Source: Macrostomum lignano
Lineage: Eukaryota
Length of the DNA stretch: 64,000 bases
Assembly (NCBI GenBank): GCA_002269645.1
Contig: NIVC01000977.1
Location: 62,001 to 126,000 of the forward strand
Direction: 5' to 3'
Of this stretch, positions 29,162 through 32,100 are shown piece after piece. The notes beneath the pieces are model-generated. The model saw only the letters and a program-made list of their open reading frames with translations, searched no databases and had not been told where the DNA came from. Within the stretch, counting starts at the first letter, position 1. Every line of letters starts with the position of its first letter. Both the position numbers and the translations under genes were made by a program.

Positions 29162-32100
29162 TTAGTCATCATCATCATCATAATCGTCATCGTCATCAGA
29201 GAGAACATTCAATTCGCCAGCCAGGTAGTCCTTGTTGAGGTCATAGGTGTACTCCCCTTCAAAATCATCGAACACAACCTTGAACTCCTGGCTGAGAATG
29301 TCCCTGCTCTGGCAGGTTGATGGCAGTCGCTGGAGGACGTGGCCTGGTATCCAGTCCTCCCCATCTGTGAAGCAGAACTTCATCTCGATTCTTCTGCTCA
29401 CCAGATCGGGGAGGTTGGCCAGCGTCCGCTGATTGGTGGTCTCGTCAATGGCGTCGCCCTCATCCTCGTGTCTTCTTCCTCGTCCTCGTCCTCGTCCTCC
29501 TCCTTGACCTCGTCCTCCTCCTTGACCTCGACCTCGTCCTTGACCTCGACCTCGTCCTTGACCTCGACCTCGTCCGCGTCCGCGACCGCCGCCTCGTCCA
29601 CCAAGGCCAGGCCCAGCTTGAGCAGCCACAGCTCCTGCATCTTGAATCCGTTGACGACGCTGCAGCCTGTCAGCAATGGCAGTGCGGACTCGCTCCTTGC
29701 GCTCGCGAGCATCCAGGAGGCCGGACGGAGGCACGGTGGGCGCATCGGCACCCTTTTGCTGGTCCTGTAGTTCCACTATCTGCAGAACTTCACGCAGTTG
29801 GCTTCGCAGTTGAGGCACACTGCGCTTGACACCAGCCGCGGAGAAGTTGAGCAGGCTGGCCTTGTCCTTGGGCAGGTGGATCTCTACAAAATATTACATG
29901 AAACATAATTTTCATGCTAAGCAGTGAGCAAACAGACACATTTTTCTGCCCACACGTACTGGTCGCTTTGTGCAGTTGCAGCTGTGCTTTGATGGCCTTC
30001 TCGTGCTGGTCAGGGGCTAGTTGGTGCAGCACAGCGTCCATCCTGGAGATGGTTGGCCAGAGTCCGCCGTAGGCCTCGATGACACGGAGAATGGATCGGA
30101 TGCTCTCGGCGTTCGAGTCCTTCTTGCGCTGCTTTTCAGCTAGCTTGGCGCGGAGAATCTCCTGGCGGCAGCTGCGCAAGGCGTCGGCGCTCTCCTTCCC
30201 TCGCTTTTCGAGCTGAGGGACCAGCTTCCGTGCCCTGGTAAGAAGGAGGTCCTTCTCGCGCTCCGTCTTGTCGGCCAGCCACTCGGACGTGCAGTTATAG
30301 CCGAAGAGCACAAGCGACTCGCGCGCAAGAGGGCGCATGTTGGGCCTGTCTGCGACGCACTTATCCAGCATCCCGAAGCCTCGCTCGACTGCTACGTTGT
30401 CCTTAGGCGCAGATGAGACAAGCTGGGCAACTTCTGGCGTGAGCTGCCGCAGAGTGCCCCCAGGCAGGTGGTCACGCACCTCTCTCTCTAGCAACACAAG
30501 CATGTGTGTCGCCATGATCTGAAGTGGTGTTTTAAAGTATAAAAGCTACAATCTATACATTCGTTAATGTTCATTGATACTGTACTGTACTTTGTGACTA
30601 ATCAGCGCATTCATAATTCAAAACCCATATTTACCTGCAGAGCCTGGCCGACAATCTCGTTCTCCAAGGCTGTCAGCTCAGACGTCAGCGCCGCCCAGAT
30701 GTCCTGCAGCTGGATGTCCCGGAGAACCGTCTGGGCCAGTTCGGGAAATGGGCCAATCATGCTGCTGGCCACAGTAACGCCCTCGGACGATGACAGCTGG
30801 CGCAGCCAATTGCAAGCGCGCTCATAGCGTTCGTTCATGTCCGTGAGGGTCACGTCTCGGCAGCGCAGGAGCACCCACAGTGGCCGGATTAGCAGAACGT
30901 CAGCAATTCCGAGTGCACGGCAGCCACTCAGCAGCAAATCAGATGCCAAGTCAGCCTGCACTGCGATCAGCAGGCGGTTGCTGCAGGTGTACTCAGCCAG
31001 GAACTCGGACAGGCGGTCTCGCTGCCAGAAAATGTTTCCCCCGTTGGGAAATGTGATGTAGGCGCGGTTGCCACGGAAGTCGTCCAAACGAAGGGACGGT
31101 GCGCCCTTCGACTCCAGATACGTTTGAAGCGGAATCGCAACGCCACACTGTTCACTGCCCAGGGCATGGAACGCCTTGCAGACGGTGCGGATTAGACGCT
31201 GCGTGCCAGATTCAGCTTGGGACGGGCGGAAGCCAGGGAGGGCAGCAGATCCGACGGCCTCTGCAGCCATGCAAGTCTCCCACTCGCGCAGCGCAGCTTC
31301 TGCGGCAGCAGCAAGATTTACAATCACATGCATGCCGCAGAACAGTGCAGTCACAGGTGGAGGTGGGTTCACGCCTTGCTGGGTTGCCAGCTCCTGCCGC
31401 ATCTCGTTGAGCAGTACGTTGAGGCACTTGTTGACCACGTGTCGGTCAGTCATTAGGAAGTTGACGCGTGCCAGTAGATTACACTTCAGGCGGCGTCTCT
31501 CTTCGTCGCTCGAGTGGGCAAGAACTACCGAGCAAAACAGATCGACCAGCTCTTCCACCGAGTAGTCCAGTTCGCGGGCGTAGATGTTCGCGGTGCCACC
31601 CTCGACCTCGCGAAGAGAAACAGCCATCGGGCGGCTGTCCCCAGTGTCAACCTATGAATGGTGCATATGTAATACAAAGCATATTGTGAATATAAAAGTT
31701 CATTCTTATTAACTAAAAGTTCTCTTTTTGTGAATATTAATAATAATAATTAATTATTAAATTCATTTCCTTCCTTTAAGTCCAATTATTTGTCAATATG
31801 CACGAAAATGCATTACTCAAGTTTACCTGGTAGGCGGCATAGTGTCGGCCCTTCTTGCTGGTAGCATCATGCAAGATCGTTATTGGTCGGTCCTCCTTTG
31901 CCCCCTGATGCAGCAGCTTCTCCATCGCGCTCGCCTTAGCTAGGCAGCTGCCAAGGCTGTAGCTCAAAGCACTGACCTGCGAACGCGACGGAAGCGCCAA
32001 GTTGCCGGCGTCGATGCCAACGAGGTCCGTGAGGACGCGTCGAATCGCTGGCTTGACGTGCTGCACAGGGACGTGGCAGTCCAGCACCAAGTGCATACAG

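What the first reader, a model, noticed from the sequence alone, without database searches (positions are those of the whole stretch)
29200..29413. Spindlin/Tudor-like domain fused to the transposase C-terminus: possible chromatin-guided integration
Seen: LPDLVSRRIEMKFCFTDGEDWIPGHVL...FKVVFDDFEGEYTYDLNKDYLAGELNVL. Known: this pattern (LVG.+IEH.F...W.G.VL...F.I.Y/F...Y.Y.L..DY..GDL.I) resembles my recollection of Spin/Ssty Tudor-like repeats, which read methylated histone H3 tails through aromatic cages; F, W and Y residues occupy similar positions here. Inference: a cut-and-paste transposase carrying its own methyl-mark reader, which could steer insertion site choice or counter silencing, as chromodomains do for some LTR integrases.
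Basis: inference. Interest (0 to 1): 0.88.

Follow-up and report, generated by a model that had tools for sequence, protein, structure and literature searches.

The report
Transposase carrying a Spindlin-type reader domain
The flagged stretch encodes a single Spindlin-type (Tudor-like) histone-reader repeat at the end of an intact, Hermes/hAT-like transposase inside a complete DNA transposon of the flatworm Macrostomum lignano, and this fusion marks a large animal transposon family, so the element may pick insertion sites by reading chromatin, which is not tested.

Summary
The minus strand of 29200-29413 translates exactly to the quoted peptide. It ends an intact 4-exon, 1171-aa gene.

The domain is a Spin/Ssty Tudor-like repeat. 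The peptide alone hits only Spindlins in the PDB (E 0.04). A 5-sequence clade profile gives E 2e-6 (hhalign 94.6%), and a 44-sequence family profile gives E 5e-39. Pfam Spin-Ssty of 44 homologous domains, but not this copy.

The host protein is a transposase. AlphaFold2 (pLDDT 83) plus Foldseek puts Hermes (hAT) in the top 10 hits. D393, D475, E790 and C511xxH514 are invariant.

The gene lies in a 6,045-bp element (27758-33802) with 16-bp terminal inverted repeats and a perfect 7-bp target-site duplication. A paralogue sits at two unrelated loci at 99.9% identity, each with its own 7-bp duplication.

At least 74 of 115 C-terminally complete homologues carry the domain, including amphioxus and gar proteins.

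Three of four Spindlin-1 K4me3-cage positions are aromatic here, and the H3R2-binding Asp is kept. The fourth cage position is Ile, next to an invariant Trp.

Chromatin-guided integration is plausible but untested. I rate it a new variant of a known kind, with moderately high interest.

The parts
27758..33802 (-). Complete autonomous cut-and-paste DNA transposon, 6,045 bp
   Evidence: It is bounded by terminal inverted repeats and a 7-bp target-site duplication. It is collinear with the paralogous elements in L001 and L003, including the first ~200 bp.
33787..33802 (-). 5' terminal inverted repeat TAGGGACTCCAGTGAG (read on the minus strand)
   Evidence: The same consensus TAGRSNSTCCAGTGAG ends the paralogous elements.
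27758..27773 (+). 3' terminal inverted repeat, TAGAGACTCCGGCGAG read on the plus strand; 13 of 16 bases match the 5' repeat
33803..33809 (.). Target-site duplication copy 1 (CTTATAT on the plus strand, ATATAAG on the minus strand)
   Evidence: The eighth base does not match on either side, so the duplication is 7 bp.
27751..27757 (.). Target-site duplication copy 2 (CTTATAT on the plus strand)
31827..33044 (-). Exon 1 (aa 1-406): N-terminal helical domain, coiled coil, and first catalytic Asp D393 (codon 31868-31866)
30635..31651 (-). Exon 2 (aa 407-745): second catalytic Asp D475 (31447-31445), C511xxH514 motif (31339-31328), R602, and the all-alpha insertion domain
29960..30518 (-). Exon 3 (aa 746-931): catalytic Glu E790 (30386-30384) in an APKDNVAVERGF motif, and N820
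29162..29883 (-). Exon 4 (aa 932-1171 plus stop): variable linker, RG repeat, Spin/Ssty-like domain and acidic tail
29474..29602 (-). Arg-Gly repeat (aa 1026-1068), encoded by an 18-nt tandem repeat; absent from the paralogues
29201..29413 (-). Single Spin/Ssty (Spindlin-type, Tudor-like) repeat, aa 1089-1159. Pocket positions are F1101, W1109/I1110, F1136 and Y1143; acidic anchors are D1150 and E1155
29165..29200 (-). Acidic tail SDDDDDYDDDDD
   Evidence: The paralogues end in shorter acidic tails.
28717..28827 (-). Conserved non-coding block in the 3' part of the element; function unknown
   Evidence: 76% identical to L001 10890-11010, at the equivalent place in the paralogous element.

Best explanation
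Shown: 29200-29413 (minus strand) encodes one Spin/Ssty-type Tudor-like repeat. It forms the C-terminal domain of a 1171-aa transposase with a Hermes/hAT-like core: an RNase-H-like fold, D393-D475-E790, a C511xxH514 motif and an all-alpha insertion domain. The gene sits in a complete 6,045-bp transposon of Macrostomum lignano with 16-bp terminal inverted repeats and a 7-bp target-site duplication. The fusion is ancestral to a large family with about 2,200 detectable homologues, including proteins from amphioxus, gar and a hemichordate and many from marine metagenome assemblies.

Inferred: the repeat tethers the transposase, which probably works as an oligomer and so presents several reader modules, to a basic and probably methylated histone tail. 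This would bias where the excised element is re-integrated. Family-wide, the residues that Spindlin-1 repeat 2 uses for H3 A1-R2-T3-K4me3 are kept: four aromatic cage positions, the D184 equivalent in 50 of 55 domains, and an acidic D189 equivalent in 42 of 55. An H3K4me3-like, promoter-proximal mark is therefore the best guess for the family.

In the Macrostomum clade the pocket is remodelled. The W151 column is not aromatic, Tyr170 is Phe, His139 is lost, and a 5-7 residue loop is inserted. The ligand or affinity of this particular copy may differ.

My confidence in the domain identity, the transposase identity and the transposon structure is about 0.95. My confidence in the chromatin-tether mechanism is about 0.45.
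For: Domain identity:
- The lone peptide hits only Spindlins in the PDB, aligned to repeat 2.
- The clade profile A4 hits only Spindlins, E 2e-6. hhalign against SPIN1 gives probability 94.6%, E 7e-8.
- The family profile A2 gives E 5e-39, matching all three Spindlin repeats, best repeat 2 at 61 bits. The next family is the SETDB1 Tudor domain at 8e-4.
- Pfam PF02513 is called in 23 of 44 homologous domains, best E 2e-14.

Conservation:
- All three M. lignano lineages (~45% identical proteins) encode the domain at 40-50% identity, whereas the preceding linker does not align.
- 59 complete plus 15 partial domains occur among 115 C-terminally complete homologues, always at the extreme C-terminus.

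Ligand residues: with Spindlin-1 residue roles taken from PMC3967050.

Transposase:
- D393, D475, C511, H514, R602 and E790 are invariant in 44 sequences.
- The AF2 model has pLDDT 83, with D393 on strand 1, D475 just after strand 4 and E790 on a helix after the helical insertion.
- The Foldseek top 10 are all Hermes, E 5e-7 to 5e-5; the P element transposase follows at 4e-3.

Mobility:
- L001 and L002 are 99.9% identical over exactly 7,307 bp, with unrelated flanks and different 7-bp duplications.
- The window element has its own inverted repeats and a perfect 7-bp duplication.

Weak hint: the window, L001 and L003 insertions lie between apparently divergently oriented genes, and the three clean duplications contain TATAA.
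Against: - No binding data and no genome-wide insertion profile exist.
- The only 3D model of the domain was single-sequence and poor (pLDDT 43). The barrel and the pocket geometry are therefore inferred from homology.
- Pfam's Spin-Ssty model does not call the window copy itself.
- In this clade the column aligned with cage residue W151 holds I, E, N, C or H.
- Spindlin's repeats work as a packed triplet. A lone repeat may not form the same binding surface.
- The four insertion sites examined are too few to show any preference.
- Hermes-like transposases are also known to favour open chromatin without any reader domain. This is my own knowledge and was not tested here.
Confidence: 0.5

Rival explanations
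1. The repeat is a protein-protein module rather than a histone reader. Single repeats from several transposase subunits could pack together in trans, as the three repeats of Spindlin pack in cis, and stabilise the transpososome. Alternatively the repeat could bind methyl-arginine on a non-histone partner, possibly the element's own RG repeat.
For: - Spindlin repeats form one integrated globular unit, and pocket 1 uses F251 from repeat 3 (PMC3967050).
- The transposon protein has one repeat, and a few homologues have two (P0040, P0061, P0043).
- In the window copy a GRGRGQ repeat lies about 20 residues upstream of the domain.
- The W151 column is not aromatic in this clade.
- The protein also has a long N-terminal coiled coil, which fits an oligomer.
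Against: - The RG repeat is specific to the window lineage, while the domain is family-wide.
- The residues conserved best across the family are Spindlin's ligand-contacting ones (cage positions, D184, D189), not only core residues.
- Oligomerisation and histone binding do not exclude each other.
Confidence: 0.25
2. The domain acts on expression rather than on target choice. Like Spindlin-1, a transcriptional co-activator, it could keep the element's own chromatin active or counter silencing. It could also recruit the transposase back to marked donor copies.
For: - Spindlin-1 is described as an H3K4me3 reader that promotes transcription (abstracts listed; PMC3967050).
- Nothing in my data separates target choice from self-regulation.
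Against: - A transposase acts on DNA ends and on the target, and no activation domain is evident.
- Precedents for reader domains on integrases concern target choice (chromovirus chromodomains, PMC3605345).
Confidence: 0.15
3. The gene is a domesticated host gene, a former transposase that is no longer mobile, and the reader domain serves a host chromatin function.
For: - The ORF is intact with spliceosomal introns and a GC-rich-exon, AT-rich-intron structure like neighbouring genes.
- At least two intron positions (after about aa 406 and aa 931) are shared with paralogues.
- A generic inverted-repeat scan found no terminal repeats.
Against: - Terminal inverted repeats and a perfect 7-bp duplication flank the window copy.
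- A paralogue occurs at two unrelated loci at 99.9% identity with different duplications, which indicates recent transposition.
- The three lineages share a terminal-repeat consensus.
- All catalytic residues are intact.
Confidence: 0.04
4. The resemblance to Spin/Ssty is a chance or compositional match.
For: The lone peptide scores only E 0.04 against the PDB, and Pfam does not call it.
Against: Profile E-values are 2e-6 for the clade alone and 5e-39 for the family, and only Spindlins are hit. hhalign gives 94.6%. Pfam Spin-Ssty is called in 23 of 44 homologous domains.
Confidence: 0.01

Closest known systems
Spindlin-1 (SPIN1) Spin/Ssty repeat 2, the H3K4me3-binding Tudor-like repeat (PDB 4H75, 4MZF, 6I8B and others; Pfam PF02513)
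   Same: The sequence pattern is shared: LVG.+V.H.F ... W.G.V ... F.(I/V).Y ... Y.Y.L..DY..GDL.I. The best match is to repeat 2. F141, Y170 and Y177 are aromatic in the window copy. D184 (H3R2 contact) and D189 (H3A1 contact) are kept as D1150 and E1155 (residue roles from PMC3967050).
   Different: There is one repeat instead of three packed repeats. It is fused to a transposase instead of forming a free-standing protein. In the Macrostomum clade the W151 column is not aromatic (Ile1110), H139 is replaced, and a 5-7 residue loop is inserted after the conserved Pro. Pfam does not call this copy.
Hermes transposase and the hAT superfamily (PDB 2BW3/4D1Q/6DWW/8EDG)
   Same: Hermes is the best structural match for the core: top 10 Foldseek hits, E 5e-7, about 570-600 aligned columns. 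The core has an RNase-H-like DDE fold interrupted by a large all-alpha insertion domain, a CxxH motif after the second Asp, and the Glu in a S/APxxNxxxER.F motif that resembles the hAT C-terminal block (by eye). The window element's terminal repeats begin TAGGG and TAGAG, fitting the hAT YARNG rule (the rule is my own knowledge).
   Different: The target-site duplication is 7 bp, not 8. Pfam finds no hAT dimerisation domain (PF05699), BED finger or DUF659. HMM searches of the PDB do not reach Hermes. The protein has an N-terminal helical domain, a long coiled coil and the C-terminal reader repeat.
Chromoviruses (Ty3/gypsy LTR retrotransposons with a chromodomain at the integrase C-terminus)
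   Same: A Royal-family methyl-mark reader fold is appended to the C-terminus of the DDE enzyme that inserts the element, as a hallmark of a whole lineage (PMC3605345).
   Different: The predicted mark may be of the opposite kind: H3K4me3-like rather than heterochromatic H3K9me.
[quoted passage not shown]
   Same: This is a cut-and-paste DNA transposase that carries a domain type known to read histone tails (PMC6446971).
Dada and P superfamilies (other C/DxxH transposases, reported with 6-7 bp and, for P, about 8 bp duplications)
   Same: They are C/DxxH-type DDE transposases. Dada makes 6-7 bp duplications and its genes contain introns (PMC3706591). The P element transposase is the second-best structural match (E 4e-3).
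   Different: Dada has DxxH, no terminal inverted repeats, CCCC and CCHC zinc fingers, and strict small-RNA-gene targets. None of these holds here. P elements have a THAP domain and a GTP-binding insertion domain (my own knowledge), and no THAP domain was found by Pfam.

Membership tests
Spin/Ssty (Spindlin-type Tudor-like repeat, Pfam PF02513) | Significant sequence or profile similarity to Spindlin repeats | tested here: met
   Clade profile against the PDB: only Spindlins, E 2e-6. hhalign: 94.6%, E 7e-8. Family profile: E 5e-39. Lone peptide: only Spindlins, E 0.04.
Spin/Ssty (Spindlin-type Tudor-like repeat, Pfam PF02513) | The window copy itself reaches the Pfam PF02513 threshold | tested here: not met
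   PF02513 gave no hit for the window peptide even at E up to 10. It was called in 23 of 44 homologous C-terminal domains, best E 2e-14. The window copy is a divergent member linked through the family profile.
Spin/Ssty (Spindlin-type Tudor-like repeat, Pfam PF02513) | Tudor/SH3-like beta-barrel fold | tested here: inconclusive
   The single-sequence AF2 model is all-beta with five strands but has pLDDT 43.
Spin/Ssty (Spindlin-type Tudor-like repeat, Pfam PF02513) | Four-residue aromatic cage (F141, W151, Y170, Y177 of SPIN1 repeat 2) | tested here: inconclusive
   F1101, F1136 and Y1143 align with F141, Y170 and Y177. The W151 column is Ile1110 when anchored on the conserved Gly, but clade-profile alignments place the invariant W1109 on W151 through a one-residue gap. 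Family-wide, the four columns are aromatic in 41, 43, 54 and 48 of 55 domains.
Spin/Ssty (Spindlin-type Tudor-like repeat, Pfam PF02513) | Three tandem repeats packed into one globular unit (Spindlin architecture) | tested here: not met
   There is one repeat at the C-terminus. Only 3 of about 74 domain-bearing homologues have two.
Spin/Ssty (Spindlin-type Tudor-like repeat, Pfam PF02513) | Binding of methylated histone H3 tail | not testable with these tools
   This needs peptide arrays or ITC. Only conservation of the D184 and D189 equivalents could be shown.
hAT superfamily transposon | Hermes-like RNase-H DDE core with an all-alpha insertion domain | tested here: met
   AF2 pLDDT 83. The Foldseek top 10 are all Hermes, E 5e-7 to 5e-5, probability 1.00.
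hAT superfamily transposon | DDE triad plus a CxxH motif after the second Asp | tested here: met
   D393, D475, C511, H514 and E790 are invariant in 44 family members.
hAT superfamily transposon | 8-bp target-site duplication | tested here: not met
   The duplication is 7 bp at three independent insertions: ATATAAG (window), CCTATAA (L001) and GTATAAT (L002). The L003 duplication is ambiguous.
hAT superfamily transposon | Pfam hAT C-terminal dimerisation domain (PF05699) and/or BED zinc finger | tested here: not met
   Neither was detected in the window protein or in 44 family members. There is only a motif-level resemblance around E790, judged by eye.
hAT superfamily transposon | Short terminal inverted repeats beginning YARNG | tested here: inconclusive
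   The window element (TAGGG/TAGAG) and L003 (TAGGG) fit. L001 and L002 (TAGGC/TAGAC) do not.
Autonomous class II (terminal-inverted-repeat) DNA transposon | Terminal inverted repeats, a flanking target-site duplication, an intact transposase gene, and copies at unrelated loci | tested here: met
   The L001 and L002 copies are 99.9% identical with unrelated flanks.

The most novel reading that the evidence does not exclude
An ancient transposon family, found across bilaterian animals and distantly hAT-like with 7-bp target-site duplications, may use a built-in Spindlin-type H3K4me3-like reader to integrate near active promoters. This would be a natural chromatin-guided DNA transposase. The vertebrate Spindlin/Ssty genes may share ancestry with this transposon domain, through domestication of a triplicated transposon repeat or through an ancient capture in the other direction.
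Probability: 0.3. Interest if true: 0.85.

Novelty: new variant of a known kind. Interest (0 to 1): 0.66.

Why it matters
Reader domains on integration enzymes are the clearest natural examples of mobile elements choosing targets through chromatin. Until now these are known mainly for LTR retrotransposons (chromodomains) and, by tethering to host factors, retroviruses.

A cut-and-paste DNA transposase family with its own Spin/Ssty reader would extend that principle to a new enzyme lineage and a new reader fold. It would predict a testable insertion bias. It would offer a compact, natural scaffold for mark-directed DNA integration.

It also raises a concrete evolutionary question: are vertebrate Spindlins and this transposon domain related by domestication or by capture?

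Full-text searches of the held library found no paper linking Spindlin or Spin-Ssty to a transposase. Repbase and InterPro could not be checked, so prior database-level annotation cannot be excluded.

Tried and rejected
- Pfam on each exon ORF, on the spliced protein and on the C-terminal peptide gave no meaningful hit.
- A word-indexed homologue search with the 89-aa peptide found no candidates. The same search with the 44-sequence family alignment returned only the same 7 M. lignano proteins. Both wasted capped searches.
The family alignment A1 was used instead.
- Single-sequence AF2 of the domain gave pLDDT 43 and is unusable for Foldseek.
- HMM searches of the PDB with the full-length profiles A1 and A3 reached only Spindlins (through the C-terminus) and coiled-coil proteins, not any transposase. 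The transposase identity needed AF2 plus Foldseek.
- A generic inverted-repeat scan around the gene found only AT-rich noise. The ends were found only after comparing two copies of a paralogue and carrying the terminal-repeat motif back to the window.
- Six Tara/ENA contigs carrying homologue P0044 turned out to be the same locus from different samples. They showed no terminal repeats and are uninformative about mobility.
- Dada (6-7 bp duplications) was considered and rejected on DxxH, absence of terminal repeats, zinc fingers and small-RNA-gene targets.
- The P superfamily was considered. It is only the second-best fold match, and no THAP domain was found.
- The host-gene (domestication) reading was rejected on the terminal repeats, the duplications and the recent copies.
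Full report
**1. The observation**

The plus strand is full of stops.

The peptide is not an isolated ORF. Four minus-strand ORFs between 33044 and 29162 join through canonical GT-AG introns: exons 33044-31827, 31651-30635, 30518-29960 and 29883-29162. Together they give one uninterrupted 1171-aa product.

A public protein of the flatworm Macrostomum lignano (P0001) is 100% identical and uses the same three junctions. That identifies the organism and confirms the gene model independently. The window is eukaryotic. 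A U1-70K snRNP gene lies at about 22.2-24.4 kb on the minus strand.

**2. The C-terminal segment is a Spin/Ssty repeat**

- The last 102 residues searched alone against all PDB sequences give 14 hits. All are Spindlin-1 or Spindlin-3, aligned to Spindlin repeat 2. The scores are weak (E 0.04-0.6), and Pfam does not call the peptide.
- Homologues settle the matter. A family profile searched against 1.84 billion representative proteins found 2,247 relatives at E<1e-3 and 274 at E<1e-30.
- An iterated local search of the C-terminal 140 residues of the 150 best found the same module at the extreme C-terminus of about 74 of them. Three carry two tandem copies.
- A 44-sequence alignment of these modules, with the window copy first (A2), hits Spindlin-1/2/3/4 at E 5e-39 to 6e-35. 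It matches all three repeats, best repeat 2 at 61 bits. The next family is the SETDB1 Tudor domain at 8e-4.
- Pfam PF02513 (Spin/Ssty) is called in 23 of the 44 members, best E 2e-14.
- To avoid borrowing significance from more canonical members, I built a profile from only the five Macrostomum-clade sequences (A4). It still hits only Spindlins at E 2e-6. hhalign against SPIN1 gives probability 94.6%, E 7e-8.

**3. Is the domain constrained?**

The genome holds three lineages of the gene, about 45% identical as proteins: the window copy, P0004 in L001/L002, and P0006/P0007 in L003.

The public models of the paralogues miss or garble the last exon. tblastn nevertheless shows that all three loci encode the domain at 40-50% identity. 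The roughly 85 residues before it do not align at all, and only the window copy has the RG repeat.

Among 115 homologues whose match reaches the end of the catalytic core, 59 have a complete domain and 15 a partial one. Most of the rest stop within a few residues of the core, as expected when a gene caller stops at an intron.

Named members come from Branchiostoma lanceolatum, Lepisosteus oculatus and Ptychodera flava. Many others come from marine metagenome assemblies. The fusion is an old hallmark of the family and not a local accident.

**4. Ligand-binding residues**

Spindlin-1 holds H3K4me3 in a cage of F141, W151, Y170 and Y177. It anchors H3A1 with E142 and D189, and H3R2 with D184. The D184A mutation costs about 90-fold in affinity (PMC3967050).

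| SPIN1 residue | Family, of 55 domains | Window copy |
|---|---|---|
| F141 | aromatic in 41 | F1101 |
| W151 | aromatic in 43 | Ile1110; invariant W1109 is one residue earlier |
| Y170 | aromatic in 54 | F1136 |
| Y177 | aromatic in 48 | Y1143 |
| D184 | Asp in 50 | D1150 |
| D189 | Asp or Glu in 42 | E1155 |

When the conserved Gly is used as the anchor, the W151 column holds Ile1110. Clade-profile alignments instead put W1109 on W151 through a one-residue gap.

The whole Macrostomum clade also lacks H139 and has a 5-7 residue loop insertion. The cage is well kept in the family and partly remodelled in this copy. Only a good structure can settle the register. My single-sequence AF2 model was too poor for that (pLDDT 43).

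**5. The rest of the protein is a transposase**

Sequence methods do not show this. Pfam and PDB HMM searches of the protein and of the family profiles return only coiled-coil noise and the Spindlin match.

The family alignment, however, has eight invariant columns, among them D393, D475, C511, H514, R602 and E790.

An AF2 model of P0001 built with that alignment is confident (pLDDT 83, core above 90). It shows the RNase-H order of strands and helices, with D393 on strand 1 and D475 right after strand 4. CxxH opens the next helix. A helical insertion domain of about 250 residues follows, and E790 sits on the helix after it.

The Foldseek top 10 PDB matches are all Hermes (hAT) transposase chains, at E 5e-7 to 5e-5 and probability 1.00 over about 570-600 aligned columns. 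The P element transposase (4e-3), ISCth4 and retroviral integrases follow.

**6. It is a real, recently mobile transposon**

- L001 and L002 lie on two different contigs. They are 99.9% identical over exactly 7,307 bp and unrelated outside that stretch.
- The shared block ends in TAGGCTGTCCAGTGAG and, in inverted orientation, TAGACTGTCCAGTGAG. It is flanked by different 7-bp duplications, CCTATAA and GTATAAT.
- Carrying the motif back to the window gave TAGGGACTCCAGTGAG at 33802-33787 on the minus strand, and TAGAGACTCCGGCGAG at 27758-27773. These match at 13 of 16 bases. Each abuts CTTATAT on the plus strand, at 33803-33809 and 27751-27757. That is a perfect 7-bp duplication that cannot be extended to 8.
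- The L003 element (4908-11467) has perfect 16-bp repeats, TAGGGTGTCCAGTGAG.
- The three elements are collinear, including the first ~200 bp and a conserved non-coding block after the stop codon.

The window element is therefore a complete 6,045-bp autonomous transposon.

The 7-bp duplication, together with the absence of Pfam hAT dimerisation and BED domains, argues against filing it as a canonical hAT. I call it hAT-like. Dada, which makes 6-7 bp duplications, does not fit.

**7. Mechanism**

Shown: a reader-type fold, with most of Spindlin's H3-tail contacts conserved, is permanently attached to a transposase.

Inferred: the domain tethers the transposase to a histone tail and biases integration. 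This would parallel the chromodomains of chromovirus integrases (PMC3605345). The PHD finger of Rehavkus transposases is the nearest case among DNA transposons (PMC6446971). An H3K4me3-like mark is the best guess for the family, and for this clade the ligand may have shifted.

One weak hint points the same way. The window, L001 and L003 insertions lie between apparently divergently oriented genes, and the three clean duplications contain TATAA. Four sites prove nothing.

The rival readings are trans-assembly or methyl-arginine binding, an effect on the element's own expression, a domesticated gene, and chance. The last two are effectively excluded.

**8. Novelty**

Full-text searches found no paper linking Spindlin or Spin-Ssty with a transposase. 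I could not query Repbase, Dfam or InterPro.

The concept of a reader domain on an integration enzyme is known. The fold, the enzyme lineage and the family appear undescribed. I rate this a new variant of a known kind, with interest about 0.66.

Noticed in passing
window 29367-29649 (minus strand), compared with public model P0001: P0001 joins ...ADRLQR directly to HGEDWIPG... and ends ...EFKIST. It therefore splices out the RG repeat and the first strand of the reader domain and replaces its last third. This may be an annotation artefact. It could also be a real isoform that lacks a working reader domain.
   Followed up: no
window 29478-29575: An 18-nt tandem repeat (5.4 copies, 93% matches) encodes GRGRGQ repeats just upstream of the Tudor-like domain. 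It is absent from the paralogues, so it looks like a recent expansion. RG repeats are typical arginine-methylation substrates.
   Followed up: partly
window 27751-27757 and 33803-33809; L001 and L002 element flanks; L003: The three clean target-site duplications all contain TATAA (ATATAAG, CCTATAA, GTATAAT). The window, L001 and L003 insertions lie between apparently divergently oriented neighbouring genes, and L002 lies inside a kinase gene's span. The sample is far too small to show a promoter preference.
   Followed up: partly
L003 13477-13621: A second 5'-end-like sequence begins with a terminal repeat identical to the window element's (TAGGGACTCCAGTGAG) and is about 71% similar over 150 bp. 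It lies inside the span of a DnaJ gene, and no matching 3' end occurs within the locus. It may be a truncated copy or a non-autonomous derivative.
   Followed up: partly
window 28717-28827: A 110-bp non-coding block downstream of the stop codon is 76% identical to the equivalent position of the paralogous element (L001 10890-11010), although the surrounding 3' region does not align. Its function is unknown.
   Followed up: no
P0040, P0061, P0043 (homologues from metagenome assemblies): These family members carry two tandem Spin/Ssty-like repeats at the C-terminus instead of one. They could be intermediates towards a multi-repeat, Spindlin-like arrangement.
   Followed up: no
window 22200-24400 (minus strand): A U1 snRNP 70K gene, with U1snRNP70_N at E 1e-24, an RRM, and an RD/RS-rich C-terminal exon. 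A tandem repeat of about 32 bp at about 23071-23294 inside it produces a spurious repetitive [15 protein letters not shown]....
   Followed up: partly
window 20434-21520: Long tandem repeats give overlapping repetitive ORFs on the minus strand (SPRQLQCQSPSAPVSVPVSSSV...). This looks like a minisatellite rather than a gene.
   Followed up: no
window 38278-39873 (plus strand): A 531-aa single-exon ORF with no Pfam match lies to the right of the transposon.
   Followed up: partly
window protein aa 23-125 and 162-290 (exon 1, 33044-31827): AF2 predicts a confident N-terminal helical domain and a long coiled coil ahead of the catalytic core. The coiled coil drew myosin and tropomyosin hits in the PDB search. 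The helical domain is a candidate for DNA binding and the coiled coil for oligomerisation. No zinc finger was seen.
   Followed up: no
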